The position numbers and the translations under genes are program-made. Of a stretch of 64,000 nt of DNA, positions 9,890-57,621 are shown one piece after another (position 1 is the stretch's first letter; the number at the start of each line of letters is the position of its first letter). The notes below the pieces were generated by a model that saw only the letters and a program-made list of their open reading frames with translations, did not search any database and was not told the origin of the DNA. The stretch spans positions 124,001 through 188,000 of IMG/VR virus record IMGVR_UViG_3300022921_000002, one strand, 5' to 3'.

Positions 9890-10599
9890 ATATAAAAACA
9901 CTCCATAACGGCATGTCAGTTAATGGCATTAATGATTTAAAAACATCACTAACCTTATATGATGAATTCTTTGTTAAGAACACATATGACTGGTGGTACA
10001 AGGTACAGCCTGGTGATATTGTTATGGATATCGGTGCTTGTAATGGTATGTTTACCTGCAAAGCACTGGATCAAGGAGCAGCAAAGGTATATGCTGTAGA
10101 GCCAAACCCTATTCTTATTGAAACCATTTTTCATAATGCTATGCCGCATATCGTAAATAAAAAGACAAGCCCTCTGTCTGTTACGAATGCGTTTGTCGGT
10201 GGAAATATTGAAAACGGGTTTGGCGACTTTGATAAAGGTAGTGTTCCTATGTTATCATTTAAAGAATTGATTAAACGCCTTGAAATACAATACCTAGATT
10301 ATCTTAAAGTTGATTGCGAAGGTGGCGAGTTCAATATGTTTAATGAGGAGAATTGGGATTTTCTATCAAATAACGTAAAACACATTGCAATGGAAGTGCA
10401 CCTTGATGCATCACCGTCTGCACCTGATATGTTTATCAAAATGAGAGAAAAGCTACTACCAAAATTACAACAGGCAGGATTTCAATTGAATTTCCTTAAA
10501 CCTGAACATAAAACAAAGATGTGGAATGATTCGTGGATCAAAGGCAAATGGCCAATCGGTTGGGGTTCCTGTTGGATGATATATTTGACAAAAAAGTAG
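9886..10599 (+). CDS. FkbM-family methyltransferase (copy 2)
   Basis: MDIGACNGMFT, VYAVEPNP, DYLKVDCEGGEF; paralog of 2849-3547. Confidence 0.85.
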   Translation: MNIKTLHNGMSVNGINDLKTSLTLYDEFFVKNTYDWWYKVQPGDIVMDIGACNGMFTCKALDQGAAKVYAVEPNPILIETIFHNAMPHIVNKKTSPLSVTNAFVGGNIENGFGDFDKGSVPMLSFKELIKRLEIQYLDYLKVDCEGGEFNMFNEENWDFLSNNVKHIAMEVHLDASPSAPDMFIKMREKLLPKLQQAGFQLNFLKPEHKTKMWNDSWIKGKWPIGWGSCWMIYLTKK

Positions 10600-10652
10600 T
10601 TGACAGAAACGGAAATCTGTTATAGTATGGACATAACATTGAAAGGATATCC

Positions 10653-13187: not shown

Positions 13188-13197
13188 AGGTAACACC

Positions 13198-13374
13198 ATG
13201 AACAACACAAAGCTTAATACACTTGAGGCAGCATGGCGGTATCAGAATACTGTTGTGGAAGCACTCGAAGCCGAAAATGCACCAGACAAATATATAACTA
13301 TTGCTAAAAAGAAACGGCTACAAATCAAAGATAAGATTGCAATTTTAAAAAATGAGGTACTAAATAATGACTGA
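13198..13374 (+). CDS. small coiled-coil protein, DUF465/YdcH-like
   Basis: ATG at 13198; KKKRLQIKDKI resembles the LKK.KL.LKD.I pattern. Confidence 0.5.
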   Translation: MNNTKLNTLEAAWRYQNTVVEALEAENAPDKYITIAKKKRLQIKDKIAILKNEVLNND

Positions 13375-13777
13375 TTGGGTAAACGATATCTATATGATGC
13401 ATAACAAATTTGGTGTGCGTGATTGGTTTGAAGAAAACAAAGATAATAAGGAATTGATGCGTAAGTATCTTATGTTCCGTTTGCTAATGTGTCAGGAGGA
13501 ACTTAGTGAAACACTTACTGCATATAATAATGGAGATTCTGAAGAGATCGTTGATGGTCTCATTGACCTTTGCGTTTTTGCTATTGGCACTCTCGACGTA
13601 TTTGGTGTTGATGCTAATGACGCTTGGGATCGTGTTTATAGTGCTAACATGGCAAAAGAGCCTGGAATTAAGCCGGGGCGTCCTAATCCGTTTGGGCTTC
13701 CAGATCTATTGAAACCTTCTGGATGGACAGCACCTAGCCACGAAGGTAATCATGGTAATTTAGATAAAGCGCTGTAA
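13367..13777 (+). CDS. all-alpha NTP pyrophosphohydrolase (MazG/HisE/dUTPase-like)
   Basis: EELSE...EEIVDGLIDLCVFAIG, V..ANM.K, DLLKP.GW..P. Confidence 0.8.
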   Translation: MTDWVNDIYMMHNKFGVRDWFEENKDNKELMRKYLMFRLLMCQEELSETLTAYNNGDSEEIVDGLIDLCVFAIGTLDVFGVDANDAWDRVYSANMAKEPGIKPGRPNPFGLPDLLKPSGWTAPSHEGNHGNLDKAL

Positions 13778-13788
13778 GTTTTACACTA

Positions 13789-13806
13789 CTGTCACAAAAC
13801 TTTAAA
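13789..13806 (+). promoter_or_regulatory. candidate Pho box upstream of pstS
   Basis: CTGTCAC-AAAA-CTTTAAA; first half-site matches the PhoB consensus, second is degenerate. Confidence 0.5.
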
Positions 13807-13901
13807 GTTTCTTTAATAAATAATTTAAGGCAAAGTGGTAAAGACTTTGTCTTTTTTAATGCGAGCGACGGGGTAAAGCCGTCAAGCAAAAGGAGAACTA
13901 A

Positions 13902-14885
13902 ATGAAACTATTAAGCTTAATGGTTGCTATAATAGCAACTGCCACTATGGCAACTGCACGTGACCAAGTTCACGTAGCTGGATCTTCAACAGTATTACCC
14001 TATGCAGCAATTGTTGCAGAGGCTTTTGGAGAAAACTTTGACTTTCCAACACCAGTAATCGAATCAGGTGGCTCAGGTGCTGGACGTAAAAGACTATGTG
14101 AGGGTGTTGGCGCAAACACTATTGATATAGCAAACTCATCATCACACATTAAAGATTCAGATATTGCACGGTGTGCTTCAAATGGTGTAAGTGAGCCAGT
14201 TGAAGTTCGTATTGGATATGATGGTATCGTATTTGCAAGCCGCTTAGAAACTAAAGGGTTTGAAAACATTACACCTATGCATATCTATTTGGCAATTTCA
14301 AATAAATCAAATGCAGAAAACTGGAAAGAAGTAGATCCAAACTTTCCGGATCGTCCAATCAAAACATTTATTCCAGGTACCAAGCATGGTACACGTGAAG
14401 TGTTTGATAAGAAGGTTATGGTATCAGGTTGTAAATCAGCCGGTTCATATGACTTGTTCTTTAAACAGAATGGTGGAGATAAAAAGAAAGCCGAAAAAGA
14501 ATGTATGAAAGTTCGTACTGATGGTGTAAGCATTGATATTGATGGTGACTATACTGAAACCTTAAATCGTTTGAAAAATAACCCAGAAGGTATTGGCGTG
14601 TTTGGTCTATCATTCTTGTTGAATAATACAGATTCAATCTATGCTGCAAATGTAAATGGTGTTGCGCCTTCAACTGAAACAATTGCATCTGGTGAGTATC
14701 CAATCTCTCGCCCTTTGCAGTTTTATGTAAAAATGGAGCATATTGATTTTATTCCTGGTCTTAAGGAATATATCCAGTTCTTTGTTTCTGATGATATGGC
14801 TGGTCCCGATAGCCCTCTTGCTGAATATGGACTAGTAAGTGATCCTGAGTTGGCAGCCACCCAAGAAATGGTTGACAATTTTTAA
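13902..14885 (+). CDS. pstS: phosphate ABC transporter substrate-binding protein PstS
   Basis: Signal peptide then RDQVHVAGSSTVLPYA, ESGGSGAG, DIANSS, GTKHGTREVF, YPISRPLQFYVK. Confidence 0.9.
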   Translation: MKLLSLMVAIIATATMATARDQVHVAGSSTVLPYAAIVAEAFGENFDFPTPVIESGGSGAGRKRLCEGVGANTIDIANSSSHIKDSDIARCASNGVSEPVEVRIGYDGIVFASRLETKGFENITPMHIYLAISNKSNAENWKEVDPNFPDRPIKTFIPGTKHGTREVFDKKVMVSGCKSAGSYDLFFKQNGGDKKKAEKECMKVRTDGVSIDIDGDYTETLNRLKNNPEGIGVFGLSFLLNNTDSIYAANVNGVAPSTETIASGEYPISRPLQFYVKMEHIDFIPGLKEYIQFFVSDDMAGPDSPLAEYGLVSDPELAATQEMVDNF

Positions 14886-14900
14886 TTCAAATGATATAAT
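14872..14900 (+). promoter_or_regulatory. consensus sigma70 promoter for the permease gene
   Basis: TTGACA (14872-14877), 17 nt, TATAAT (14895-14900). Confidence 0.75.
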
Positions 14901-14906
14901 AATCTG

Positions 14907-14938
14907 ATAGGCGGAATGTAAAGTTTCGCCTATTTTTT
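14907..14938 (+). terminator. intrinsic terminator-like hairpin
   Basis: ATAGGCGGAAT-GTAAA-GTTTCGCCTAT followed by a T run. Confidence 0.6.
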
Positions 14939-14953
14939 AACGGAGGAAAATAA

Positions 14954-15919
14954 ATGGAACTACTTACAATGTGGAGTCTTATTGGATTCCTGCTTGCTGC
15001 ATATGCAGTTATTGCCAACGATTCAGTACAAACGCTCGGTACTTGGATGGCATCAAACAATGAAAGATTTAATTATAAGGTATTATGGGCCGCGGCATCC
15101 GCTGTTTTGTTATATACACTCTGGTATGGGTGGTATATGAATGGTGGCGATATATCTTACGGCCGTTTGAATAAGATCCCATTCCAAGAAGTACAATGGT
15201 ATCACGCCGCGGCACCTGCTATTCTTGTTTTATTAACACGAATGGGTGTTCCGGTTTCAACATCGTTTTTGGTCTTATCAGTATTTGCTTCAACCTTTGT
15301 GTTGGAAAAAATGCTTATGAAATCAATTATGGGTTATGGTGTAGCCGCGGCATTTGCTTATGCTGTGTGGTTTGCTATCCATAAGTATTTTGGTAAATGG
15401 TACGACGAAACTCAACCAGTATCTGAAGGTAATAAAAAGTTTTGGCGTATTGCCCAATGGGTAGCAACAGGTGGATTATGGTTTACTTGGTTATCTCACG
15501 ATATTGCTAACATTGCGGTATTCCTACCACGTGCCATTCCAGTAGATCTAATGGTGTTTATCAGTATTGTGTTTATTGGCGGCTTGTTCTTTATGTTTAG
15601 AGAAAAAGGTGGTAAGATCCAAAAGATTGTTTTGGAAAAGCATAACACTCGATACGTACGATCGGCGACATTGATTGACTTATTCTATTGGCTATGCCTG
15701 TATTTCTTTAAAGAACTAAATGATATTCCTATGAGTACAACATGGGTATTCGTTGGTTTGCTCGCAGGCCGTGAACTTGCAATGGCAACGTACTTTGGTA
15801 AAAAGAAAACAAAATCTGTATTCCCATTAGTTGCTAAAGACTTTGGTAAGATGATGGTAGGACTTGGAGCTTCAGTTGCTCTTGTATTATTGGTCCATTA
15901 TGTTATTAATCCTACATAA
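14954..15919 (+). CDS. multi-pass membrane protein, PiT/PHO4-like phosphate permease
   Basis: Many hydrophobic helices; IANDSVQTLGT and SHDIANIA resemble the two PiT signatures; PVSTS and PMSTT repeats; next to pstS. Confidence 0.6.
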   Translation: MELLTMWSLIGFLLAAYAVIANDSVQTLGTWMASNNERFNYKVLWAAASAVLLYTLWYGWYMNGGDISYGRLNKIPFQEVQWYHAAAPAILVLLTRMGVPVSTSFLVLSVFASTFVLEKMLMKSIMGYGVAAAFAYAVWFAIHKYFGKWYDETQPVSEGNKKFWRIAQWVATGGLWFTWLSHDIANIAVFLPRAIPVDLMVFISIVFIGGLFFMFREKGGKIQKIVLEKHNTRYVRSATLIDLFYWLCLYFFKELNDIPMSTTWVFVGLLAGRELAMATYFGKKKTKSVFPLVAKDFGKMMVGLGASVALVLLVHYVINPT

Positions 15920-15955
15920 CATTATGTTTCATTAATGCGATGTTAACGGTAACAT

Positions 15956-15963
15956 TATAAATA
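15956..15963 (+). promoter_or_regulatory. T4-type late promoter
   Basis: TATAAATA. Confidence 0.6.
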
Positions 15964-16009
15964 GTGGGATCTTCAGACATAAATATTATTTTATAGAGGA
16001 GGTCCCACA

Positions 16010-16258
16010 ATGTGCAGTCCATTTGTACGTAAAGAAGCCAACCGAATGAATTGGATGATAAAGGGTCAGTTGATTGACCGAGCCGAAAGTGATAAAACAG
16101 TCGAGTATATCTATGACTCATATTTCAAAAGGTTGTGGAATAACAATGAAAACTATATCCACGAAACCGGTTTTGAACAAGCCTGGAAAATCCGTGAAGC
16201 AGAAATGATAAATGAAGATGTTAAAAGAGTTGCAGTCCTTGGAGGACACTTCGATTAA
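16010..16258 (+). CDS. hypothetical protein
   Basis: Strong GAGGAGG RBS; 82 aa. Confidence 0.7.
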   Translation: MCSPFVRKEANRMNWMIKGQLIDRAESDKTVEYIYDSYFKRLWNNNENYIHETGFEQAWKIREAEMINEDVKRVAVLGGHFD

Positions 16259-16272
16259 CAAGAAAGTATATT

Positions 16273-16830
16273 ATGGAAATAATGAGATCCCACCCTCATA
16301 ATACAGTATCATTTGATGGGACATATTATATAAAAGAATTTAAACACCATCGGCACCATTTAAATGAAGAATGGGCAATGCTATATGATGGCTTATATAA
16401 TAAATTTCCCGACATAACACCAGAACTTATAGACTTTGTACCAGGCAAGAAAATTGTTATGGAAGCGGTTGAAGGTTTGACTCCACAGCAAATTAAATAT
16501 GAGCGGTCGAGTGAAACTATACTTAACGATTTAAAAAAGTTACTTAGCATATCACAAAAAATCACCTCAGCATTTGCCGAATATTCTTTGGATCTTAAGG
16601 ATACATATTACTGCTATCACTATGACTTAAACCCTGGGAACCTTATCATACAAGATTTGGATAAACTTAAGTTCAAATTTATTGATATTGATTCTATCAG
16701 GTTTGACTATGCCTTTATGCGTCAAAGTTTATTTGATACATGGATTGCTGATATGTATTCCGAGTATAGATGTATGAAACTTGCGGAAGGACAAGCATGG
16801 GATACTTTTTTTACCGCGGTGAGGAATTAA
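16273..16830 (+). CDS. protein-kinase-like (APH/choline kinase fold) protein
   Basis: YIKEF, IVMEAVEG, HYDLNPGNLII catalytic loop, FIDID. Confidence 0.55.
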   Translation: MEIMRSHPHNTVSFDGTYYIKEFKHHRHHLNEEWAMLYDGLYNKFPDITPELIDFVPGKKIVMEAVEGLTPQQIKYERSSETILNDLKKLLSISQKITSAFAEYSLDLKDTYYCYHYDLNPGNLIIQDLDKLKFKFIDIDSIRFDYAFMRQSLFDTWIADMYSEYRCMKLAEGQAWDTFFTAVRN

Positions 16831-16836
16831 TTTGGT

Positions 16837-16883
16837 TTAAAAAGAAATTAACTATTGACATTTAGTATAGAATCAGTTATATT
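16837..16883 (+). promoter_or_regulatory. conserved early promoter, copy 1, with candidate CtrA box
   Basis: TTAA-N7-TTAAC (16837-16852), TTGACA (16855), spacer containing GAATCAG, TATATT (16878). Confidence 0.7.
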
Positions 16884-16914
16884 GTTTATATAAGGTAAAC
16901 AAAGGAAAAACCAA

Positions 16915-17145
16915 ATGTCAAGAATTACACATCTTCATAACGGCGCAATGATTAAAGCCGACGTAATTGAAAGCTTTGACAAAGCAATCCGTGACGACTT
17001 TAATCTTCGTCCTGGTTTTGGCTCAACTGATTTTTGGAATTTTGTTGAGTCTGATATGTATATGGACTTATCTGGTGTGTATGCTTCATCTTATATTGAT
17101 GAATGCTTTGCCACCTTGGCAGAAATTGAAGTTTTAGGAGTATAA
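16915..17145 (+). CDS. hypothetical early protein
   Basis: AAAGGA RBS; downstream of the early promoter. Confidence 0.7.
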   Translation: MSRITHLHNGAMIKADVIESFDKAIRDDFNLRPGFGSTDFWNFVESDMYMDLSGVYASSYIDECFATLAEIEVLGV

Positions 17146-17147
17146 TA

Positions 17148-17387
17148 ATGGAACCTTGGATTCAAGAAACCCGCAATGGCTTTGAAATAGCCGAAGAAGA
17201 AATGAACCGTATTGAAGCTATGCCTGTTCAAGGTGAGCAATCAATAATGGTTCAACGTGACATGAAAGCATGGGCTGTTGAAAAAGGCGTTTGGCTATCC
17301 GAACACTATAAAAATATTATTGTTCTTCATGCTATTGACCGTGGATGGCTTCAAGAATATTCAAATGGTATGGAGGTTGTAGGATGA
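17148..17387 (+). CDS. hypothetical early protein
   Basis: AGGAG RBS; tightly packed operon. Confidence 0.65.
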   Translation: MEPWIQETRNGFEIAEEEMNRIEAMPVQGEQSIMVQRDMKAWAVEKGVWLSEHYKNIIVLHAIDRGWLQEYSNGMEVVG

Positions 17388-17653
17388 GGTATTGCGCAAA
17401 ATCAAACACCTTTGAATTTAAAGGCCGTGTGTATGATGTAGAATTTGGTTCTGATGATACACGTCATGGAGGGCCTTTTGACCGCGGCTCAGCGGATAGT
17501 TACTATGGGCGCGGTTATCGACCTCATTACTATGTTGGTGATACTGGAATGTCTGAAGCCGTTGCTGAGCTGACTGATATTGAAAAAGATGCGTACTATG
17601 CTGGGTATGAGTATAATGAAGAAATCGTTCGAGATTTTAAAGATTGGGGTTAA
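17384..17653 (+). CDS. hypothetical protein (RHGGPFDRG.ADSYYGR motif)
   Basis: Start moved to ATG 17384; motif recalled from small marine phage proteins. Confidence 0.65.
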   Translation: MRYCAKSNTFEFKGRVYDVEFGSDDTRHGGPFDRGSADSYYGRGYRPHYYVGDTGMSEAVAELTDIEKDAYYAGYEYNEEIVRDFKDWG

Positions 17654-17713
17654 TTTCTTTTTAACTTAAATTAACCATTGACATTTGTTGTCGAATCAGT
17701 TATATTAGAATCA
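17650..17713 (+). promoter_or_regulatory. conserved early promoter, copy 2
   Basis: TTGACA (17678), 17-nt spacer ending GAATCAGT, TATATT (17701), then AGAATCA; TTAA-N7-TTAAC at 17650-17665. Confidence 0.7.
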
Positions 17714-17732
17714 ACAACAAAAGGAAAACACC

Positions 17733-18110
17733 ATGAACTATTCAGTATATCAAATTCAAATGACTCGTGAAATCGCCGACAAAGTAAACGCAGGCGAAAC
17801 TGTACCAGCATTTGAAGCTCGGAATAAAATGAATCTTGACTTTGCTGGTCACAAAATTGGTGGTTTGGCAGACGAGGCACTTACTGCCGGGTTTTATACT
17901 CACGTTGCTAACATTGAAGCTGACAGTGCAAACGATGTATTTGAAATTGGTAATATGGGTCCTGAGTCGGCAATCACTCGCTTTTCTCGTATGCACTCAC
18001 TATCAGTCGGTGATCTTATCGTTGATGAAGAAGGTCAGGTAATTGTTGTTGCTCCTATTGGTTTTGTAGCATTTGCCTTCCGTCCTGAAATGAACAAGGT
18101 TGCTGCATAA
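17733..18110 (+). CDS. hypothetical early protein
   Basis: AAAGGA RBS; HSLSVGD motif; ends in VAA. Confidence 0.7.
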   Translation: MNYSVYQIQMTREIADKVNAGETVPAFEARNKMNLDFAGHKIGGLADEALTAGFYTHVANIEADSANDVFEIGNMGPESAITRFSRMHSLSVGDLIVDEEGQVIVVAPIGFVAFAFRPEMNKVAA

Positions 18111-18130
18111 ATAAACTAAAGGAGTTTATA

Positions 18131-18727
18131 GTGGCAAAAGAATATATAGCAGAACTTGAGATCAGGCTCCCGGATAGAAACGGGGTGCCTGTTCCTGATA
18201 TTGAAATTAAAGAATGGGGTTTAAGCTTGGGCTGTCATAGCGTTGAGCTTACCGGTACATCTGATGATGGCTTTCGTATATTCACATTTAAAGGAATGAA
18301 CCGAGAGTCAGTTAGTAATATTGCCGCTCGAGTATCAGCGGTTGATGGAGTAACTTTTGATCCTGATTCAATATATGAAGCTGATACTAATTTTCCTGAC
18401 CATTTTACTTCTGCTCAAAATGCCATTATCTTTCCATCAAAGTTTGCTGCTGCTGAGTACACATATAGTGAAGAAGGAGACTTTATCGGTGTAGTCCTTG
18501 AAGATGGGCGGACATTATCTTCTGGTGATTACCTTGATATATCAGATACTATCATACCAGGTGGTGCTAAAGGAGTTATTAAAGGTAATCCGCATGACTA
18601 TGAAACTTCATTGGTAACTGATGAAACTTACGTAACTGATGGTGAAAACAATCCACAGATTGAAGATACGCCTGCCGAAGGTATGCCAGGTTGGGAATTA
18701 CCTAATATTGAAATACCTAACGAATAG
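18131..18727 (+). CDS. hypothetical acidic protein
   Basis: AGGAG RBS, GTG start, CATAAATA late-like motif upstream. Confidence 0.6.
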   Translation: MAKEYIAELEIRLPDRNGVPVPDIEIKEWGLSLGCHSVELTGTSDDGFRIFTFKGMNRESVSNIAARVSAVDGVTFDPDSIYEADTNFPDHFTSAQNAIIFPSKFAAAEYTYSEEGDFIGVVLEDGRTLSSGDYLDISDTIIPGGAKGVIKGNPHDYETSLVTDETYVTDGENNPQIEDTPAEGMPGWELPNIEIPNE

Positions 18728-18805
18728 CTGTATCATTTAAGTCACTAAAAATAATCAAAAATTTTATTTGGTTGACATTTCCGCAAAATAGTTTATATAT
18801 ATCTA

Positions 18806-19075
18806 GTAATCGTTGATACAAGTCAACGCATGGATCGGACCGCGGGGCAGTACCGCGCTGCTCCACCATAAACACATTGACAATAATTTTAGTGTGTTTA
18901 TGATGGGGCAGAACAAGGATCGACGGACGTGAAGAGATGAGAGTAGATTACCGTGTTGGCCTACGTTATTAAGCCAAAAATTTTAATTGCAAATGACAAT
19001 TATAAACCATCTGGATTTGCCCTAGCGGCGTAATCAAAGGGGGTTGGCCACTTACCTAGCAACAGAAAATGTGGC
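18806..19075 (+). ncRNA. ssrA: circularly permuted (two-piece) tmRNA, alphaproteobacterial type
   Basis: T-arm CGCGG-GGCAGTA-CCGCG and CTGCTCC-A-CCA (CCA 18866-18868) come first; then an intervening hairpin (18869-18904); then 5' piece GGGGCAG (18905) pairing with a G3:U; tag GCA AAT GAC AAT...GCG GCG TAA (18989-19033) = ANDNYKPSGFALAA. TTGACA at 18772. Outer ends approximate. Confidence 0.93.
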
Positions 19076-19105
19076 ATATTTTTAACAAACAATAAAGGAA
19101 GTAAT

Positions 19106-19900
19106 ATGACCAAATTTCTATCAACAACAGCCCTTGTATTTGCGGGTACAGCGGCATTTGCAGATCAAGCAACAACACCAGCAGTCACACTTAGTGGCGA
19201 AATTGAAACAGTAATCGCTGAAGGTCTGAATGATAAATGGGGTGCAACTACTTCATTCGGTTTTGATGGCGCTTTGACAAACGGCGCTGCAACAGGTTCA
19301 ATGGAATTTGTTGTTGACTCTGATAATGATCTAACACTTGACGGTTGGTCAATGGGTACTAATGTTGCAGGAGTTGCAATGTCTTTTGGTGACCAAGGTA
19401 ACATTTGGTTTGACACAGAATCTGGTGCGACAATTGAAGAACCAACAATGGCAGATGAAAGCTTGTCTCTCGGTGTAGGTAGTGCAACCGTTGCGTTGGC
19501 ATTCACTGATATTGGTACGGACGTAACTGATATTGCTAACGTACAAGGTGCATACGGTCTGAACGTTGGCATTGCTAATATAACTGCAGCAGGTGATTAC
19601 AACATTGATTCCGAAGAATGGGTAGTTGGTGGCCGCGCTGATACAGCAGGAATGCTTGACAGTGTTCGTCTAGGTGGTGCCGCAACATACGGTTCTGCGT
19701 CAGAGAACATTGCTTTTGAAGCAGATGCTACTGTAATGGGCCTGACTGCATATGTTGCAGGTGACCAGGATGATCTTGCACAAAATATCGGTGGTTCATA
19801 TACATATGACCTAGGTGGTATTGATCTAAAAGGTGCTGTTGACTATGACATTGATGCAGAAACATATGCACCATCTGTAACAGCGACATTCGCATTTTAA
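19106..19900 (+). CDS. outer-membrane porin-like beta-barrel protein
   Basis: Signal peptide ending AAFA, VTLSGE start, alternating amphipathic strands, very acidic, C-terminal ATFAF. Confidence 0.75.
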   Translation: MTKFLSTTALVFAGTAAFADQATTPAVTLSGEIETVIAEGLNDKWGATTSFGFDGALTNGAATGSMEFVVDSDNDLTLDGWSMGTNVAGVAMSFGDQGNIWFDTESGATIEEPTMADESLSLGVGSATVALAFTDIGTDVTDIANVQGAYGLNVGIANITAAGDYNIDSEEWVVGGRADTAGMLDSVRLGGAATYGSASENIAFEADATVMGLTAYVAGDQDDLAQNIGGSYTYDLGGIDLKGAVDYDIDAETYAPSVTATFAF

Positions 19901-19926
19901 AAAGTAATATTGTATAAATTTTAGAC

Positions 19927-19956
19927 GGGGTGGCATTAATTTGTCACCCCTTTTTT
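19927..19956 (+). terminator. rho-independent terminator
   Basis: GGGGTGGCA-TTAATT-TGTCACCCC-TTTTTT. Confidence 0.85.
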
Positions 19957-19996
19957 CATTATAAATAACTATATCATACCACGGAGGAAATTTATA

Positions 19997-20536
19997 ATGA
20001 GCAACGAGTTGAAAAAATTAACGTGGGATCATCATCAAGCAGCAGAACGGCGGGCATTTGCTCGTAAGCTTTTAAGAGGCGAGTTATCGGACTACGAATA
20101 TTATATATTCCTGGTCTGCCAATGGCACAATTATACACCACTTGAAAATGCTGTTATTATTCCACCTAATCTCAATGCTATATATCGAGCGGACCGTATC
20201 AAAGCTGATATGCAGGAACTCGAAAAACTACACGGATTTGGCCACCCATCGGCATTACCAACATCCGTAAAAGAATACCAAAACCATATTGGTCAACTTA
20301 CCGAATCTGAAAACAATCATGGTTTGCTTGCCCATATGTATACTAGGCATTTTGGTGAACTACACGGTGGACAAATAATCAAAAAGAAAGCACCGGGCTC
20401 AGGTACTATGTATGAGTTTGAAGGTGATAAAGAATTGCTTATCTCAGAGTTTAGAAAACTTCTTGACGATAGCATGGCACCCGAGGCAAAAAAGTGTTTT
20501 GAATTTGCCTCAAAATTATTTGATGAATTGTCATAA
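19997..20536 (+). CDS. hemO: heme oxygenase (Ho1/HemO type)
   Basis: Proximal His in TWDHHQAAE; AHMYTRHFGELHGGQII distal helix; TATAAATA at 19960. Confidence 0.88.
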   Translation: MSNELKKLTWDHHQAAERRAFARKLLRGELSDYEYYIFLVCQWHNYTPLENAVIIPPNLNAIYRADRIKADMQELEKLHGFGHPSALPTSVKEYQNHIGQLTESENNHGLLAHMYTRHFGELHGGQIIKKKAPGSGTMYEFEGDKELLISEFRKLLDDSMAPEAKKCFEFASKLFDELS

Positions 20537-20606
20537 TATAATTGACAATCCAAGTTTTGTGATATAAAATAATACTATAATACAACATATTCTAAGGAGG
20601 AATCAA

Positions 20607-20774
20607 ATGCAAGATAACGCATTAGAAGACATTAACCTTAAACCTAAGAAACGTGCAGATCGACTTTCAAGAAGTATCAGCGCAAGGCGAAGGCGGAAAA
20701 TGTTGAAACAAGTAAGAGAAACGCGCTTACTAAACGCATATGCCAAATTGAAAAGGGCACGCAGAAAGAAATGA
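20607..20774 (+). CDS. small very basic protein, 55 aa
   Basis: Hand-translated MQDNALEDINLKPKKRADRLSRSISARRRRKMLKQVRETRLLNAYAKLKRARRKK; AAGGAGG RBS; ATGA overlap with the next gene. Confidence 0.7.
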   Translation: MQDNALEDINLKPKKRADRLSRSISARRRRKMLKQVRETRLLNAYAKLKRARRKK

Positions 20775-21454
20775 CACCACTATGGGATCGGCTTAACAGC
20801 TATGCTGAATACATATCAAATTCATTTGATAATAAGTTTAAGCGATATGATAACCAAAAATATACTGATGATATGCACTTTCCTGGATGGACTGATACCT
20901 TTTGGAATTCAGATCAAATCTACAAAGCGCATTTGAAAACCATTGTACCAGAAAACGGTAAAGGTTTATGGTTGATGCACGTTAACGTATTTCCAAAAGC
21001 AAATATTGAATTACCTATTCTTGGGTTTGATATTGTTGCCGGTCCCAAAAAGATTACAGGATCATTTATGGACTTTTCACCATTGTTAGGTTTTGCACAT
21101 CCTTACCATGATTATATGGAACGGCGAGTTGCTAACCTAGAATGGAATAAACCACGTGAATTACCACCGTGGGCAAAAGAAATCTTTTCAAGTGATATGC
21201 TTGCGGTTGGTAATATTAATACTGATGATGAGCTTAATCAGTTTATACAAGTGACAACTGATTTGGTAGATTATTATCTCGACAACCTTGATGATAACAC
21301 ATTTTACAGTCGGCGTGAAACAACACCTCTATTAAATAAGTATTGTCAAAATCAAAAATTAAATCCACATTTGCACCGATCCATTTTAGCAATGGGTATA
21401 TCCGAAGAAGATAAAGATGAATATGTAAATAACGTGCTATTCGAGGAGATTTAA
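20771..21454 (+). CDS. pcyX: ferredoxin-dependent bilin reductase (PcyA/PcyX-like)
   Basis: GLWLMH70VNVFP, PILGFD87IVAG, FMDFSP, RELPPWAKEIFS, YCQNQKLNPHL; adjacent to heme oxygenase. Confidence 0.82.
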   Translation: MTPLWDRLNSYAEYISNSFDNKFKRYDNQKYTDDMHFPGWTDTFWNSDQIYKAHLKTIVPENGKGLWLMHVNVFPKANIELPILGFDIVAGPKKITGSFMDFSPLLGFAHPYHDYMERRVANLEWNKPRELPPWAKEIFSSDMLAVGNINTDDELNQFIQVTTDLVDYYLDNLDDNTFYSRRETTPLLNKYCQNQKLNPHLHRSILAMGISEEDKDEYVNNVLFEEI

Positions 21455-22114
21455 ATGGCGTTTTTAGTACATCCCTTGCCACCAGTAAACGTATATGTTA
21501 AAATGGAATATCTATACGATTTGGATTTCGCTGACGACCGAGGATGGGGTAACTTAACTCCTGGCATTTGGATTAGTGTTAAATCAACTCAATCAAAAGC
21601 GTTATATTTTGAAACACTTCTTACAGACTATGGAGCATTATATGATAAATTACCTATATCAGCTTTTGTTTGGAAAGAAGACTTCGATCTTGAAGACCAG
21701 CTTCCACTTGATGTTCTTCAGCTTTGGGATTGTTTTGATTACGACCTTACCGTTATCCAAAAGCCAATCTTGTGTAGGTGTGAGTTTTTTGGAAAAGACA
21801 AAAAGATGCACGCAGGAGAATACGAATTTACCATAGATAATGCTCACAGAGATAACGCATATCTCGATACTAATTTTTCAGAACACGATCCAGAGCACAA
21901 ATCATTTAATGTTATTAGACTTGATAATGGTCAATTCGCTGCTCAACCAAACAACAGAGTTATATGGAGAGACAGTTCATTAACACCTGCTAATTTGAAA
22001 CGACCTGATTTTAAAGTGTGTACTCAAAACTACGCAGTAGAAGATCAACCCAAATGGTCGGTTGGCCACACTGATGAATGGCAATATAAAACAAAAGAGG
22101 AAGAAAACGGTTGA
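21455..22114 (+). CDS. conserved hypothetical protein (marine phage type)
   Basis: 219-aa ORF; LYDKLPISAF, QLWDCF, NGQFAAQPNNRVIW. Confidence 0.75.
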   Translation: MAFLVHPLPPVNVYVKMEYLYDLDFADDRGWGNLTPGIWISVKSTQSKALYFETLLTDYGALYDKLPISAFVWKEDFDLEDQLPLDVLQLWDCFDYDLTVIQKPILCRCEFFGKDKKMHAGEYEFTIDNAHRDNAYLDTNFSEHDPEHKSFNVIRLDNGQFAAQPNNRVIWRDSSLTPANLKRPDFKVCTQNYAVEDQPKWSVGHTDEWQYKTKEEENG

Positions 22115-22270
22115 CAATAAATGGATGTTGTGATAATATTAATATTGTAAGGAATCAAACAATAGCTGAGTTTGATAACCATAGGTATTTAATTACTTTA
22201 CATTATTGTAAGTCTTGCGGGTCTAAAAAGGCCAGCTCAAACATAACTCATATTAAAAAGGAGAAAACAG

Positions 22271-22474
22271 ATGTATGTTAAACACGTACTAGGCGAACGC
22301 AATAAATTGATGTATCGTGCTGAAATTCATAAAGATAATGAAGGAACATATTCTATTCGTTATTTCTCGGAAGCACAAGAAATTAAACGTGAAACTTTTG
22401 AAGGAAAATCTATCCACTATGTCGAGGATGCGGCTGATAATTGGATCAGTGGGATTAAGACATTAAATGGATAG
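22271..22474 (+). CDS. hypothetical protein
   Basis: AAGGAG RBS. Confidence 0.6.
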   Translation: MYVKHVLGERNKLMYRAEIHKDNEGTYSIRYFSEAQEIKRETFEGKSIHYVEDAADNWISGIKTLNG

Positions 22475-22661
22475 CAATAACATACCTGAAATCCGTGGTA
22501 ATACTTATGGTGTTGAAATTCAAATAAAAGATAGACCTTTTGTGAAAATTAATGGAAACATAGTTTATGAGGACAAGAAAGATGTAATGCTTTTTTGGAC
22601 AGCCTATAGAATGGGAAGGGACCATAAGAAAAATGAAATTAGACACGCGTTGGGACTTTAG
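22467..22661 (+). CDS. hypothetical protein
   Basis: Packed between neighbours; 64 aa. Confidence 0.55.
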   Translation: MDSNNIPEIRGNTYGVEIQIKDRPFVKINGNIVYEDKKDVMLFWTAYRMGRDHKKNEIRHALGL

Positions 22662-22665
22662 ACAA

Positions 22666-22905
22666 ATGATTACACCGCCAAGGTCGCCTGAAAAAATCCA
22701 CCATGAAATTGCGGACATGCTGGCCAACGGTGTAAATTATATTGATGCGTTAGTTGAATATGCACGCAAGAATAATCTAGAAATCGAGGCAGTTGCTGAT
22801 ATCGTAAAGAAATCATCAATACTTAAAGAGAAACTTAGATCAGAAGCTGTGCAATTGAGATTGGTTGAAAAAGATGATAAAGACATCACAGAGCTTTGCA
22901 AATGA
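22666..22905 (+). CDS. 33: late transcription coactivator gp33
   Basis: NYIDALVEYARKNNLEIEAVADIVKKS.ILKEKL..EA..L; precedes gp59 and gp32. Confidence 0.85.
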   Translation: MITPPRSPEKIHHEIADMLANGVNYIDALVEYARKNNLEIEAVADIVKKSSILKEKLRSEAVQLRLVEKDDKDITELCK

Positions 22906-23476
22906 GGAAACTTTTCAGCTCTATATAAAATATCTTGCAATGAAAAAACACTTTACCACGGACGGTTATGACTATCAAAAATATCGTGGTAAAGTAAGAG
23001 CCAAATTTGAAACATATCGCACACGTAACGATGTTTTCTTCTTTCACAAATTGTCAACTAAGGATGAGCCAATAAATCAATTGTTGGCTAATATGGTTGT
23101 TAATCCTAATTCATGGATACGTGATATTGTTGAAGACATTGGTGATGAGCGATACGTTGATTGGCGCAAAAAGATGGATGCGTTAAGTTATACTTTTAAA
23201 TCTGATTTGAGTAAACTTGACGATAACTACCAAGCAAATTTTGTAACACCAGACGGACAGCATCCGCATATCTTACGTCTATATTTACAAAAGCAAATAT
23301 CACTTGAGACGTTTACAATAATTACCAATTTATCAAACATTTTTCCTTATTGGGATGATAATTTGGTTGACAAAATCGTTGCTCGTGATATAATTAGATT
23401 ATCCAAGAAATACAAACCGTTCTTGGAAATAAATGAAAAAAAGTTCAAGGATATCATCCGTGATCGGTTTTTCTGA
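22874..23476 (+). CDS. 59: helicase loader gp59
   Basis: YIKYLAMKKHF..DGYDY.KYRGKV; ISLETF; KKYKPFL; synteny. Confidence 0.88.
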   Translation: MIKTSQSFANEETFQLYIKYLAMKKHFTTDGYDYQKYRGKVRAKFETYRTRNDVFFFHKLSTKDEPINQLLANMVVNPNSWIRDIVEDIGDERYVDWRKKMDALSYTFKSDLSKLDDNYQANFVTPDGQHPHILRLYLQKQISLETFTIITNLSNIFPYWDDNLVDKIVARDIIRLSKKYKPFLEINEKKFKDIIRDRFF

Positions 23477-23484
23477 TATAAATA
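23477..23484 (+). promoter_or_regulatory. late promoter upstream of gp32
   Basis: TATAAATA. Confidence 0.6.
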
Positions 23485-23556
23485 GTTGGTTAACTGATGT
23501 TAACTACATTTCGCAACATAAAACGCTATACAAAGCAATATTAAGGAGATACGTAT

Positions 23557-24498
23557 ATGACTATGTCATTTGATGCACTCAAAAAGAATCGTTCAAGTTC
23601 TTTAAATAAATTGAACCAACAGCTCGACAAGATTTCTCAAAAGAGCTACTCTGATCCCAATGAAGGTAAAATGTGGAAACCAACTCGTGACAAAGCGGGT
23701 AATGGTTTTGCTATCATTCGTTTCTTGCCTGCCCCTCAAGGTGAAGAAATGCCATTCGTTCGTATTTGGGATCACGGTTTTCAAGGCCCAACAGGTCTGT
23801 GGTACATTGAAAACTCATTAACAACAATCGGTGCGGATGACCCGGTTTCAGAATTTAATTCAAAATTGTGGAACTCAGGTATTGAGTCCGATAAAGAACA
23901 GGCACGCAAACAGAAGCGTCGTCTGAAGTATGTTGCCAATGTCCTTATTGTAAAAGACAGCGCAAACCCTGATAATGACGGCAAGGTCTTTATGTACCAA
24001 TTCGGTAAAAAGATCTTCGACAAACTGAATGATATGATGAACCCTCAGTTCGAGGATGAAACACCAGTAAACCCATTTGATTTTTGGGAAGGTGCAAATT
24101 TCCGTTTGAAAATCCGTAAGTTTGAAGGATATCCAAACTATGACAAATCAGAATTTGATTCACCGTCACCTATTGCCGAAGATGATGCAGAAATCGAAGC
24201 TATCTGGAACCAACAGCATAAACTGCAAGAGTTGGTTGATCCAAAGAACTTCAAAGATTATAATGAATTGAAAGCAAAGCTACACCGTGTACTTGCTTTG
24301 AATGAAGAACCATCTGATCCAACAACTGCTGTTGGTGACGCCGATGATGATCTTGATTTGAGTAGCCTGGGTAATGCAGCAACGTCGGCACCTCAACCGA
24401 CAATGCCTACCGCAATGCCTGAAACATCATCCACAACCATGTCAATGGACGACGATGATGAAGATCTTTCAATCTTTAAGGAACTAGCAAATGGTTAG
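23557..24498 (+). CDS. 32: single-stranded DNA-binding protein gp32
   Basis: DKAGNGFAIIRFLP, HGFQGPTGLWYIENSLTT, FDFWEGANF.LK, acidic tail. Confidence 0.95.
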   Translation: MTMSFDALKKNRSSSLNKLNQQLDKISQKSYSDPNEGKMWKPTRDKAGNGFAIIRFLPAPQGEEMPFVRIWDHGFQGPTGLWYIENSLTTIGADDPVSEFNSKLWNSGIESDKEQARKQKRRLKYVANVLIVKDSANPDNDGKVFMYQFGKKIFDKLNDMMNPQFEDETPVNPFDFWEGANFRLKIRKFEGYPNYDKSEFDSPSPIAEDDAEIEAIWNQQHKLQELVDPKNFKDYNELKAKLHRVLALNEEPSDPTTAVGDADDDLDLSSLGNAATSAPQPTMPTAMPETSSTTMSMDDDDEDLSIFKELANG

Positions 24499-54174: not shown

Positions 54175-54214
54175 CTATTGACATTACTAATAGAATCAGT
54201 TTATATTAGAATCA
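54172..54214 (+). promoter_or_regulatory. conserved early promoter, copy 3
   Basis: TAACTATTGACA (TTGACA 54178), 18-nt spacer with GAATCAG, TATATT, AGAATCA. Confidence 0.7.
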
Positions 54215-57448: not shown

Positions 57449-57621
57449 TGTTTAAATTGTTTAAATCTAATACAGACGCAGAAATTGATTTTGGGCAAGA
57501 TGTATCAATGGTACCACAGATTGAAATAGTACCTGAGCCATCATTATCAGATATGCTCAAATTGGTTGAAGAACGTCTTGACCGTATTGAAAGTAAAATT
57601 GACAAACTACTCAATGAGTAA
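57448..57621 (+). CDS. hypothetical protein, 57 aa
   Basis: Hand-translated MFKLFKSNTD...RLDRIESKIDKLLNE. Confidence 0.55.
   Translation: MFKLFKSNTDAEIDFGQDVSMVPQIEIVPEPSLSDMLKLVEERLDRIESKIDKLLNE

What the first reader, a model, noticed from the sequence alone, without database searches (positions are those of the whole stretch)
18806..19075. Circularly permuted two-piece tmRNA in a phage
Seen: acceptor 3' end (T-arm plus ACCA at 18865-18868) precedes the GGGGCAG 5' end, separated by a 36-nt hairpin spacer; G3:U alanine determinant; tag ANDNYKPSGFALAA*. Known: this permutation is the alphaproteobacterial form and needs RNase P and other host RNases to mature; the AA terminus is a ClpXP signal. 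Phage tmRNAs I know of are mostly one-piece. Inference: keeps ribosome rescue running if host tmRNA is cleaved by anti-phage nucleases, or changes tag specificity. No smpB is in this window.
Basis: partly seen in the sequence, partly recalled or inferred. Interest (0 to 1): 0.78.

Follow-up and report, generated by a model that had tools for sequence, protein, structure and literature searches.

The report
Two-piece tmRNA gene in marine phage
A large uncultured marine T4-like phage carries a complete, circularly permuted (two-piece) ribosome-rescue RNA gene; this kind of gene is already known from marine phages, but here its tRNA-like core and spacer turn out to be a module that is swapped between related phages.

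Summary
ARAGORN and two Rfam models (108.8 and 106.7 bits) call a permuted, alpha-type tmRNA at 18805-19076 (+). ACCA lies at 18865-18868, the spacer (IVS) is 36 nt, GGGGCAG starts at 18905, G3:U is present, and the tag is ANDNYKPSGFALAA*.

The window is the replication module of a T4-like myovirus and is identical to part of a 221-kb IMG/VR contig. No smpB was found among 46 ORFs scanned.

The novelty premise is outdated. Buchholz et al. 2022 described two-piece tmRNAs in Melnitz and pelagimyophages and counted 53 two-piece forms among 133 unique phage tmRNAs. Melnitz carries its copy in the same genomic slot.

In 47 unique phage relatives, the acceptor stem, T-arm, 3' hairpin and IVS stem co-vary, so the gene is under selection. 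The most likely role is ordinary trans-translation with host SmpB, AlaRS and RNase P, expressed from an early promoter.

New side findings:
- The 94-nt T-arm/acceptor/IVS module (18832-18925) is 100% identical to a phage that is only about 74% identical overall, while a 97% twin carries a different module.
- In relatives the IVS holds real small protein genes.
- The tag family has no genuine bacterial carrier among 185,579 species genomes.

Verdict: a new member of a known kind, of moderate interest.

The parts
18772..18801 (+). Putative sigma-70-type early promoter of the tmRNA gene. The -35 is TTGACA at 18772-18777 and the -10-like TATATA is at 18794-18799 (or 18796-18801). The predicted start is about 18805-18808, which is the first base of the acceptor piece.
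   Evidence: Sequence. TTGACA is conserved at the aligned position in the 74%-identical relative L144, where it reads TTGACA-17-TAATAT, and in L107. 18 of 47 unique relatives have TTGACA-N15-19-TAnnn[TA] within 120 nt upstream. The window holds 25 TTGACA-N16-18-TANNNT sites against 4.4 expected by chance. The -10 lacks the final T, so the consensus scan did not list it. The start site is inferred.
18805..18868 (+). Acceptor piece (about 64 nt). It comprises the 5' strand of helix P2 (18806-18809 and 18831-18837), a local 7-bp hairpin at 18811-18828, the T-arm at 18841-18857, the acceptor 3' strand at 18858-18864, discriminator A and CCA at 18865-18868.
   Evidence: Rfam tmRNA_permuted alignment, fold, and covariation: the three free T-arm pairs are paired in 47/47 sequences with 2-4 pair types.
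18869..18904 (+). Intervening sequence (IVS, 36 nt), absent from the mature RNA. A 9-bp stem (AAACACAUU / AGUGUGUUU) closes a 12-nt loop. The 3' leader UGAU pairs with ACCA.
   Evidence: Fold: dG -29.3, z -8.0. The IVS stem is 91% paired across 46 unique relatives against 28-57% in shifted registers, with 3-6 pair types per position. UGAU precedes G1 in 35 of 47 unique spacers.
18877..18904 (+). Promoter-like site inside the IVS, TTGACA-16-TATGAT (11 of 12 consensus positions). It is probably fortuitous. Its -10 is the conserved UGAU leader, and a transcript started from it (about 18911) would lack the acceptor 5' strand.
   Evidence: An IMG/VR scan found this arrangement only in the window's own population (L143, L145) and in L144, which shares the whole cassette.
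18905..19076 (+). Coding (mRNA-like) piece. It comprises the acceptor 5' strand GGGGCAG at 18905-18911, the SmpB-binding D-loop analogue at 18912-18923, the P2 3' strand at 18924-18951, PK1, the tag ORF and the 3' hairpin. The exact 3' end is unknown (19076-19085).
   Evidence: Rfam alpha_tmRNA covers up to 19076. The two free acceptor-stem pairs are paired in 47/47 sequences with 4-5 pair types.
18952..18977 (+). Pseudoknot PK1. Stem 1 is CGUG 18952-18955 with UACG 18962-18965. Stem 2 is UUGGC 18956-18960 with GCCAA 18973-18977.
   Evidence: Stem 1 comes from the Rfam structure line. Stem 2 is by inspection of the sequence. The covariation test was inconclusive because the MAFFT alignment is gappy in this region.
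18989..19033 (+). Tag reading frame: resume codon GCA, peptide ANDNYKPSGFALAA, stop TAA.
   Evidence: ARAGORN. Relatives carry AN[DENT]N[FY][AK]PSG[FYL]ALAA.
19047..19084 (+). Conserved 3' hairpin (GCCAC 19047-19051 with GUGGC 19071-19075; loop holds the alpha-type motif ACCUAGCAACAGAAA), followed by a U-run at 19079-19084. It may act as a weak terminator or as a processing signal.
   Evidence: All 5 pairs co-vary with 3-5 pair types each and are paired in 84-97% of sequences. Folds.
18832..18925 (+). Exchangeable TLD+IVS cassette (94 nt: T-arm, both acceptor strands, IVS, D-loop analogue). It is bounded by the conserved blocks GGAUCGGAC (18832-18840) and GGAUCGACG (18917-18925).
   Evidence: It is 100% identical to L144, a phage about 74% identical overall and 81% identical in the rest of the tmRNA. 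The 97% twin L107 differs here by compensatory changes and carries a 164-nt IVS.
19106..19959 (+). Downstream porin-like gene (19106-19900) and the first strong intrinsic terminator (19927-19959). The gene is probably co-transcribed with the tmRNA. It is not part of the RNA itself.
   Evidence: Terminator scan, protein atlas. The gene order is kept in L107 and L122.

Best explanation
This is a functional phage-encoded two-piece (circularly permuted, alphaproteobacterial-type) tmRNA. Inferred steps: it is transcribed early in infection by host sigma-70 RNA polymerase from the TTGACA promoter at 18772, as one precursor that may run on into the downstream porin-like gene. The precursor folds so that the acceptor stem, the ACCA/UGAU pairing and the IVS stem form one long hairpin. 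By analogy with Caulobacter, host RNase P cuts 5' of G18905 and host 3' nucleases trim back to CCA at 18868. This removes the 36-nt IVS and leaves a piece of about 64 nt and a piece of about 175 nt held together by helix P2. Host alanyl-tRNA synthetase charges it through G3:U and discriminator A. Host SmpB and EF-Tu deliver it to ribosomes stalled on broken mRNAs. Translation resumes at GCA 18989 and adds ANDNYKPSGFALAA, whose ALAA end sends the product to host ClpXP-type proteases. The benefit to a T4-like phage that shuts off and degrades host nucleic acids would be to keep or raise ribosome-rescue capacity while host ssrA transcription stops and mRNA decay creates many non-stop messages. 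What is shown: the gene, its structure, its conservation and covariation, its phage location, and its presence in RNA libraries. What is inferred: processing, charging, partners and benefit.
For: ARAGORN and two Rfam models at twice their gathering scores. All identity elements are present in the sequence. Across 47 unique phage relatives the free positions of the acceptor stem and T-arm are paired in 47/47 with up to 5 pair types, and the 3' hairpin and IVS stem co-vary. Tags keep AN.N... and ...ALAA/VAA. The gene lies among T4-type replication genes (gp43, gp41, gp59, gp32, gp46, UvsW, UvsY, topo II, RNR) and at the same place in dozens of IMG/VR contigs 67-79% identical to the window. Melnitz has its SsrA in the same slot upstream of gp33-gp59-gp32. 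An early-type promoter is conserved upstream. The locus is held by many salt-marsh, estuary and marine metatranscriptomes, and in run X14 a stand-alone 250-nt contig covers 18817-19066 with no coverage upstream. No smpB in the window means dependence on host SmpB. Precedent: PMC9004378.
Against: There is no direct evidence of processing, charging or tagging. The RNA runs are available only as assembled contigs, which give no read ends and could include DNA carry-over. X1 and X2 show flat depth across the gene and its flanks. The host is unknown, so compatibility with its SmpB, RNase P and proteases is assumed. Invariance of G3:U and several core positions in my set is partly built in by the search pattern. 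The rest of the genome of at least 221 kb was not examined for smpB.
Confidence: 0.8

Rival explanations
1. Changed tag specificity. The phage tmRNA tags stalled products with a phage-specific peptide (middle part YKPSGF) so that they avoid or engage a different adaptor or protease than host-tagged proteins do, or so that host proteins are selectively recycled into amino acids.
For: The tag family AN[DE]N[FY]xPSGxALAA was found in no genuine bacterial genome among 185,579 species representatives. The only three hits are mis-binned phage contigs. The family is conserved across many phage contigs. Buchholz et al. raise selective tagging as one option.
Against: Both ends known to carry recognition (N-terminal ANDN, C-terminal ALAA) are canonical alpha-type. 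Only the usually variable middle differs. The genome scan required exactly this length and a TAA stop, so near relatives in bacteria would be missed. No phage adaptor or protease was seen in the window.
Confidence: 0.12
2. Anti-defence backup. The phage copy replaces host tmRNA that has been cleaved or depleted by host anti-phage nucleases or toxins.
For: This is general reasoning only. Early-promoter placement fits a need early in infection.
Against: No defence or counter-defence gene is linked to the locus. The phage RNA is so similar in its core to alpha-type tmRNAs that a nuclease recognising the host core would probably cut it too. Host shut-off is a simpler explanation.
Confidence: 0.08
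3. Split transcription. The TTGACA-16-TATGAT site inside the IVS is an active early promoter, so the coding piece and/or the downstream porin-like gene is transcribed separately from the acceptor piece.
For: The site matches 11 of 12 consensus positions and belongs to a class that is about 6-fold enriched in this window, 25 sites against 4.4 expected. The same IVS occurs in two phage lineages.
Against: TATGAT is the conserved leader that pairs with ACCA and is present in most relatives that have no -35. CAUUG at the stem top is also common, so only 'ACA' is special. A start about 7 nt downstream (about 18911) would remove the acceptor 5' strand and give a non-chargeable RNA. Only 1 of 47 unique IVSs has this arrangement, and the two lineages share it through cassette transfer, not through independent retention.
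Confidence: 0.1
4. Decoy or inhibitor. The RNA titrates host SmpB and blocks host trans-translation, as proposed for the TLD-only tmRNA of mycobacteriophage DS6A.
For: There is a precedent for an inhibitory TLD-only phage tmRNA (PMC4131195 and PMC11915505). The phage brings no SmpB of its own in this window.
Against: Unlike DS6A, this gene keeps PK1, a resume codon, an intact conserved tag frame with an ALAA end, and the alpha-type 3' hairpin, all conserved or co-varying in relatives.
Confidence: 0.04
5. Not a phage gene. It is a host tmRNA on a bacterial or prophage fragment, an att-site remnant, or a recent neutral capture.
For: tmRNA genes are common integration sites, and fragments of them occur in prophages.
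Against: The gene is complete. T4-type genes lie on both sides and almost all are on the same strand. No integrase family was seen. The window is identical to part of a 221-kb viral contig. The gene is syntenic in many divergent viral contigs and in Melnitz and shows covariation within phages.
Confidence: 0.02

Closest known systems
SsrA (two-piece tmRNA) of Methylophilales phage Melnitz and related pelagimyophage-type genomes (Buchholz et al. 2022, PMC9004378)
   Same: It is a permuted alpha-type tmRNA in a marine T4-like myovirus. It is placed behind an early promoter in the variable region upstream of gp33-gp59-gp32. It has a 14-residue ANDNY...YALAA-type tag (Melnitz: ANDNYVPVDYALAA). No phage smpB is reported. 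It gives the only DNA hits in GenBank phages, at 71% over 140 nt.
   Different: There is no glutamine riboswitch at the 3' end here. The tag middle differs (KPSGF). The downstream neighbours differ (porin-like gene, hemO, bilin reductase). The phage is a different deep lineage: its DNA polymerase is at most about 45% identical to any GenBank phage. The contig is 221 kb against 141 kb for Melnitz.
Two-piece tmRNA of Caulobacter crescentus and other Alphaproteobacteria (Keiler, Shapiro and Williams 2000; Rfam RF01849)
   Same: It has the same gene permutation, T-loop type (GGGGCAGUACC), G3:U, PK1, ANDN...ALAA tag and 3' hairpin with the ACCUnGCAACAGAA loop. It gives a full-length match to the alpha model.
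   Different: It is encoded by a virus. It is about 43 model positions shorter between the tag stop and the 3' hairpin, and part of the 5' extension is replaced by a local hairpin. Its tag family was not found in bacterial genomes.
One-piece tmRNAs of mycobacteriophages (Bxz1 group) and Bacillus phage G, and the TLD-only tmRNA of phage DS6A (PMC4131195)
   Same: These are also phage-borne ssrA genes without smpB.
   Different: They have the standard (unpermuted) gene order or lack a tag frame. They come from Gram-positive hosts and are unrelated in sequence.
Permuted tmRNA genes with cargo in the intervening sequence (a tRNA-Ala gene; a repetitive element) noted in the 2025 tmRNA database paper (PMC11915505)
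   Same: These show that the IVS tolerates insertions, as in the relatives of this window (IVS lengths of 23-277 nt).
   Different: The cargo in the phage relatives is protein-coding small genes. I found no report of this. The window's own IVS is short and carries no ORF.

Membership tests
tmRNA, permuted (two-piece) form, alpha type (Rfam RF04321 / RF01849) | Covariance-model score above the curated gathering score | tested here: met
   108.8 bits (gathering score 47) and 106.7 bits (gathering score 50), both full-length model matches. alpha_tmRNA is the best member of its clan.
tmRNA, permuted (two-piece) form, alpha type (Rfam RF04321 / RF01849) | Permuted gene order: T-arm, acceptor 3' strand and CCA lie upstream of the acceptor 5' strand, separated by an IVS | tested here: met
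   ACCA at 18865-18868, IVS at 18869-18904, GGGGCAG at 18905-18911.
tmRNA, permuted (two-piece) form, alpha type (Rfam RF04321 / RF01849) | Alanine identity: G3:U pair, discriminator A, encoded CCA | tested here: met
   G18907:U18862, A18865, CCA at 18866-18868. Invariance in relatives is partly imposed by the search pattern.
tmRNA, permuted (two-piece) form, alpha type (Rfam RF04321 / RF01849) | Helices maintained by compensatory change in relatives | tested here: met
   Free pairs of the acceptor stem and T-arm are paired in 47/47 with 2-5 pair types. The 3' hairpin shows 3-5 types per pair. PK1 was inconclusive because of a gappy alignment.
tmRNA, permuted (two-piece) form, alpha type (Rfam RF04321 / RF01849) | Tag reading frame with an Ala resume codon, a stop codon, and a hydrophobic ...LAA end | tested here: met
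   GCA at 18989 to TAA at 19033, ANDNYKPSGFALAA.
tmRNA, permuted (two-piece) form, alpha type (Rfam RF04321 / RF01849) | The precursor is cleaved into two RNAs held together by base pairing | not testable with these tools
   Only assembled contigs of the RNA runs were available. They span the IVS and give no molecule ends.
tmRNA, permuted (two-piece) form, alpha type (Rfam RF04321 / RF01849) | Charged with alanine, binds SmpB, and adds the tag to stalled nascent chains | not testable with these tools
   This needs biochemistry or proteomics.
Phage-encoded tmRNA of marine T4-like myoviruses (Melnitz / pelagimyophage type) | Located in a T4-like phage genome, in the variable region upstream of gp59-gp32, behind an early promoter | tested here: met
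Phage-encoded tmRNA of marine T4-like myoviruses (Melnitz / pelagimyophage type) | Glutamine (glnA-type) riboswitch in the 3' part of the gene | tested here: not met
   No glnA RNA match even at E up to 1 in 17000-21500. Buchholz et al. state that this is common but not a defining feature.
TLD-only inhibitory phage tmRNA (DS6A type) | Lacks a tag coding sequence and pseudoknots | tested here: not met
   Tag ORF, PK1 and 3' hairpin are all present.

The most novel reading that the evidence does not exclude
In this phage clade the permuted tmRNA gene acts as a landing pad. The self-contained T-arm/acceptor/IVS module (18832-18925) moves between co-infecting phages by recombination in the two universally conserved blocks GGAUCGGAC and GGAUCGACG. 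Its IVS loop serves as a cargo slot that carries small protein genes in relatives and a sigma-70-type promoter in this window. On this reading the spread of the module is driven or exploited by its cargo, somewhat like intron, homing or promoter-stem-loop cassettes of T4-type phages, rather than being neutral recombination. In the L107-type cargo the ORF runs past the RNase P site, so processing would turn its message into a non-stop mRNA, which is a built-in link to trans-translation.
Probability: 0.25. Interest if true: 0.65.

Novelty: new member of a known kind. Interest (0 to 1): 0.38.

Why it matters
The gene itself adds one more lineage, uncultured, at least 221 kb, from salt marsh, estuary and sea, to the marine myoviruses already known to carry two-piece tmRNAs. 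It confirms that ribosome rescue is a function these phages keep under selection while relying on host SmpB. It also shows that tmRNA type is a poor guide to the host, since Melnitz carries an alpha-type gene but infects a non-alphaproteobacterium. The side findings are of more interest to RNA and phage biologists. The tRNA-like domain plus IVS and the mRNA-like domain have separate histories, with breakpoints that preserve every helix. The IVS of a permuted RNA gene can also house protein-coding genes. If confirmed, that would be a new kind of gene nesting and a natural system for studying how RNA processing and translation of an embedded message compete.

Tried and rejected
- **Processing test (no answer).** I hoped to see the two pieces in metatranscriptomes. 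All holding runs are kept only as Logan contigs, so the single read-laying run gave presence and a tmRNA-only contig in X14 but no molecule ends.
- **Internal promoter (mostly rejected).** I followed the TTGACA-16-TATGAT site as a possible second promoter. I largely rejected it because the -10 is the conserved UGAU leader that pairs with ACCA, the start would fall inside the acceptor strand, and it is unique to one cassette.
- **Host or source lineage (not resolved).** I searched bacterial genomes for the tag. The only hits were three contigs of one 'Rhodobacteraceae' MAG, which carry gp43, gp59, hemO, FDBR and porin homologues and are mis-binned phage.
- **Glutamine riboswitch as in Melnitz:** absent.
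- **Family assignment of the IVS ORFs (weak or none).** PHROGs gave only weak hits for the L107-type ORF (phrog_16066, E 0.0015) and none for the Trp-rich peptides. tblastn against GenBank phages found nothing.
- **First register for the IVS stem:** it was off by one and gave a false negative. It was corrected.
- **PK1 covariation:** the MAFFT alignment was too gappy to judge.
- **Prophage or att-remnant reading:** rejected; see the rival explanations.

Full report
**Observation.**
- T-arm at 18841-18857.
- Acceptor 3' strand CUGCUCC at 18858-18864.
- ACCA at 18865-18868.
- A 36-nt spacer at 18869-18904.
- GGGGCAG at 18905-18911, giving a G3:U pair (G18907:U18862).
- A tag frame GCA...TAA at 18989-19033.

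ARAGORN reports one RNA gene in the whole 64-kb window: a permuted tmRNA at 18772-19124 with tag ANDNYKPSGFALAA*. Rfam at gathering threshold reports only two matches in the window, both at this locus and both full-length. They are tmRNA_permuted (108.8 bits, threshold 47) and alpha_tmRNA (106.7 bits, threshold 50). The acceptor strands plus spacer fold into a nearly perfect 22-bp hairpin (dG -29.3 kcal/mol, z = -8.0). The whole precursor folds with z = -3.1 and recovers the T-arm, the long hairpin and a 3' hairpin.

**What genome this is.** Nearly all ORFs lie on the + strand at 35-40% G+C. They include:
- T4-type topoisomerase II, UvsW-like helicase, the gp46 nuclease subunit, gp43 DNA polymerase, gp41 helicase and ribonucleotide reductase.
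- gp59 and gp32.
- UvsY, ThyX and a sigma-factor-like protein.

The DNA polymerase is at most about 45% identical to any GenBank phage, and the best hits are cyanomyoviruses. The window is 100% identical to part of a 221,447-bp IMG/VR contig (L143). Dozens of other viral contigs align to window 13-28 kb at 67-79% nucleotide identity and have a tmRNA at the same place. So this is an uncultured, large T4-like marine phage lineage, not a bacterium or prophage. Runs holding the locus are salt-marsh, estuary, seawater and marine metatranscriptomes.

**Is it functional.** I collected 120 viral loci with an alpha-type T-arm/acceptor pattern. From these I extracted 47 unique tmRNAs with both pieces.
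- At positions left free by the search pattern, the acceptor stem (2 pairs) and T-arm (3 pairs) are paired in 47 of 47 sequences with 2-5 different pair types.
- All five pairs of the 3' hairpin (19047-19051 with 19071-19075) co-vary.
- The stem that closes the spacer is 91% paired, against 28-57% in shifted registers.
- Tags begin AN.N and end ALAA, VAA or similar. The window belongs to a sub-family AN[DENT]N[FY][AK]PSG[FYL]ALAA.

This pattern means selection for a working tmRNA within phages. Invariance of G3:U and other core bases is partly imposed by my pattern and is not counted as evidence.

**Expression.** A TTGACA box at 18772-18777 followed by TATATA lies just upstream. It would start transcription at about 18805-18808, the first base of the acceptor piece. 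In the 74%-identical relative L144 the aligned site is a canonical TTGACA-17-TAATAT. The window holds 25 TTGACA-N16-18-TANNNT sites against 4.4 expected, so host sigma-70 early promoters are this phage's habit. The first strong terminator is at 19927-19959, after the next gene, so the tmRNA may be co-transcribed with it. Logan contigs of four RNA runs cover the locus. In X14 a stand-alone 250-nt contig spans 18817-19066, including the spacer, with no coverage upstream. That fits a discrete precursor transcript, but contigs give no ends and DNA carry-over cannot be excluded. Processing therefore remains untested.

**smpB.** Pfam scans of 46 ORFs of 95-327 aa found no SmpB family, and the larger ORFs are identified enzymes. 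The phage RNA must therefore use host SmpB, unless a copy lies in the unexamined 157 kb or more of the genome.

**Comparison with what is known.** The only DNA hits in GenBank phages are the annotated SsrA genes of Methylophilales phage Melnitz (71% over 140 nt). Buchholz et al. 2022 (PMC9004378) described that gene as a two-piece alpha-type tmRNA behind an early promoter. They found permuted tmRNAs in 17 of 47 related contigs. They counted 53 two-piece forms among 133 unique phage tmRNAs, 50 of them marine or aquatic. In Melnitz the gene sits upstream of gp33-gp59-...-gp32, the same slot as here, and its tag is ANDNYVPVDYALAA. The glutamine riboswitch fused to the Melnitz gene is absent here. 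The 2025 tmRNA database lists 79 unique phage sequences (PMC11915505). So the finding is a new member of a known kind.

**Mechanism.** The most likely mechanism is standard trans-translation by analogy with Caulobacter:
1. Early transcription of one precursor.
2. RNase P cleavage 5' of G18905.
3. 3' trimming to CCA at 18868.
4. Charging by host AlaRS.
5. Delivery by host SmpB and EF-Tu.
6. Tagging with a peptide whose ALAA end is a ClpXP-type degron.

The likely benefit is to keep ribosome rescue going while the phage shuts off host transcription and mRNA decay produces non-stop messages. The conserved leader UGAU (35 of 47 unique spacers) pairs with ACCA. This explains why the bases before G1 read TATGAT. 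The alternative roles are listed as rivals (changed tag specificity, backup against nucleases, decoy). None has positive support here apart from the phage-specific tag middle.

**The promoter-like site in the spacer.** TTGACA-16-TATGAT at 18877-18904 scores 11 of 12. Its -10 is the inherited leader, and CAUUG at the stem top is common in relatives. A start about 7 nt downstream would delete the acceptor 5' strand. In IMG/VR the arrangement occurs only in the window's own population and in L144. I rate it as probably fortuitous, with about a 10% chance that it is active.

**Tag family and host.** A scan of 185,579 species-representative genomes for AN[DE]N[FY]xPSGxALAA-TAA found three stretches. 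All three are in one MAG named Rhodobacteraceae bacterium Water_Bin34. These contigs have 35-39% G+C, different coverages, and homologues of the window's gp43, gp59, hemO, bilin reductase and porin-like genes, so they are mis-binned phage contigs. Within the limits of that exact pattern, the tag family is phage-specific and the gene is an old phage resident, not a recent capture. The host remains unknown. Melnitz shows that an alpha-type tmRNA does not prove an alphaproteobacterial host.

**Modular exchange.** L107 is 97.3% identical to window 9720-23670 and identical in both flanks of the tmRNA. It differs in a patch covering the T-stem, both acceptor strands, the D-loop analogue and the spacer stem. 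All differences are compensatory, and its spacer is 164 nt instead of 36 nt. Conversely, L144 is about 74% identical overall and 81% identical in the rest of the tmRNA, and has a different tag (ANDNVAPSGYALAA with a TGA stop). Yet it is 100% identical to the window over 18832-18925. The breakpoints lie in the universally conserved blocks GGAUCGGAC and GGAUCGACG. The exchanged unit contains complete helices (T-arm, acceptor stem, spacer hairpin), while the two strands of P2 stay with the recipient, so no pairing is broken. Variant alleles co-occur in the same samples (loose ends in X1 and X3).

**Spacer cargo in relatives.** Spacer length ranges from 23 to 277 nt. Three cargo types look like real genes:
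- **L107-type.** A small basic protein (...GDEFDALSKKAKNYYHWKPGERKKIKRGYNKRLRK...). It lies inside a 164-nt spacer in L107 and L125-L134. It is a free-standing gene with its own ribosome-binding site in L135-L141, at 61-73% identity. In the spacer copies the frame runs past G1 into the tmRNA.
- **L001-type.** A 43-aa Trp-rich ORF with a Shine-Dalgarno sequence, in L001, L046, L082, L084, L102 and L042.
- **L010-type.** A 33-aa ORF that lies in the spacer in L010 and L031 but directly 3' of the tmRNA in L015 and L035, at 64% identity.

I found no report of protein-coding cargo in a tmRNA intervening sequence. The 2025 database paper mentions only a tRNA gene and a repeat element. The window's own spacer is the short, ORF-free form.

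**Verdict.** The claimed rarity is outdated and the specific functional guesses are unsupported. The gene is an ordinary and almost certainly functional member of the marine-myophage two-piece tmRNAs. The interesting additions are that its tRNA-like/spacer module is exchanged between phages and that this spacer can carry genes in close relatives.

Noticed in passing
L107:4728-4907 (- strand); also L125-L134 (IVS copies) and L135-L141 (free-standing copies): The 97% twin of this window has a 164-nt tmRNA spacer that encodes a 59-aa basic protein (MKTRIKMQGGDEFDALSKKAKNYYHWKPGERKKIKRGYNKRLRK...). The frame reads across the RNase P site into the tmRNA. The same protein family occurs as a free-standing gene in other viral contigs at 61-73% identity.
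   Followed up: yes
L001, L046, L082, L084, L102, L042 (IVS of 149-167 nt); L010 and L031 (IVS of 132 nt) versus L015:2950-3048 and L035: Two further small Trp-rich ORFs (43 aa MNWDWHWISWF..., with a Shine-Dalgarno sequence; 33 aa MIWLVWNWF...) sit in tmRNA spacers. The 33-aa gene lies just 3' of the tmRNA in other contigs (64% aa identity), so it is a real gene that changes position.
   Followed up: yes
window 18832-18925 versus L144:4088-4181 and L107: The 94-nt T-arm/acceptor/spacer module is 100% identical to a phage that is about 74% identical overall. The 97% twin carries a different module. This is a recombination mosaic with breakpoints in the conserved blocks GGAUCGGAC and GGAUCGACG.
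   Followed up: yes
window 19106-19900 (+): The gene directly downstream of the tmRNA encodes a 264-aa protein with a signal peptide and a C-terminal ...ATFAF. It belongs to virus-only clusters whose models resemble Gram-negative porins (Porin_4, Porin_1), so it is a phage-encoded outer-membrane beta-barrel. It is conserved next to the tmRNA in L107 and L122.
   Followed up: partly
window 19997-20536 and 20771-21454 (+), plus 21455-22114: A heme oxygenase and a ferredoxin-dependent bilin reductase form a two-gene cassette, the hemO-pcyX/pebS type known from marine phages (PMC11480375). It is followed by a protein of PHROG 3704, annotated 'ferredoxin'. This is unusual outside cyanophages.
   Followed up: partly
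window about 27600-61500 (+): A large set of glycan-related genes: two sulfotransferases, two FkbM-type methyltransferases, a capsular-polysaccharide synthesis protein, phosphomannomutase, UDP-glucose/GDP-mannose dehydrogenase, glycosyltransferases (GT25, DXD type), a NodU/Nol-like carbamoyltransferase (57566-58984) and a 1087-aa cytidylyltransferase-domain protein (34485-37748).
   Followed up: no
window, 25 sites, e.g. 16855-16883, 17678-17706, 54178-54207: TTGACA-N16-18-TANNNT sites are about 6-fold over chance. Several share a longer motif (TTGACATT...GAATCAGTTATATT), which suggests repeated early-promoter cassettes.
   Followed up: no
L121, L122, L123 (FZLS01000066.1, FZLS01000023.1, FZLS01000007.1): Three contigs binned in the public MAG 'Rhodobacteraceae bacterium Water_Bin34' are T4-like phage contigs of this clade (gp43, gp59, hemO, FDBR, porin homologues; 35-39% G+C; coverage of 5x to 86x). 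This is mis-binning, or at best a weak host hint.
   Followed up: yes
L143 (IMGVR_UViG_3300022921_000002, 221,447 bp), L145: The window is 100% identical to part of a 221-kb viral contig, so the phage is above the 200-kb 'jumbo' size. The remaining sequence was not examined for smpB or tRNAs. The window itself has no tRNA gene.
   Followed up: partly
Read laying loose ends at window 18834-18908 in runs X1 and X3: Other tmRNA alleles join the window's sequence exactly in the conserved core in the same metatranscriptomes. One has the L128-type upstream sequence and one has the same spacer stem but a longer loop. So variant phages co-occur where recombination could happen.
   Followed up: partly
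L033:772-8170: A 163-kb viral contig with an alpha-type permuted tmRNA (tag ANDNTVVEMRLAA) next to a block of 27 tRNA genes. It is a different phage group with a much larger translation gene set.
   Followed up: no
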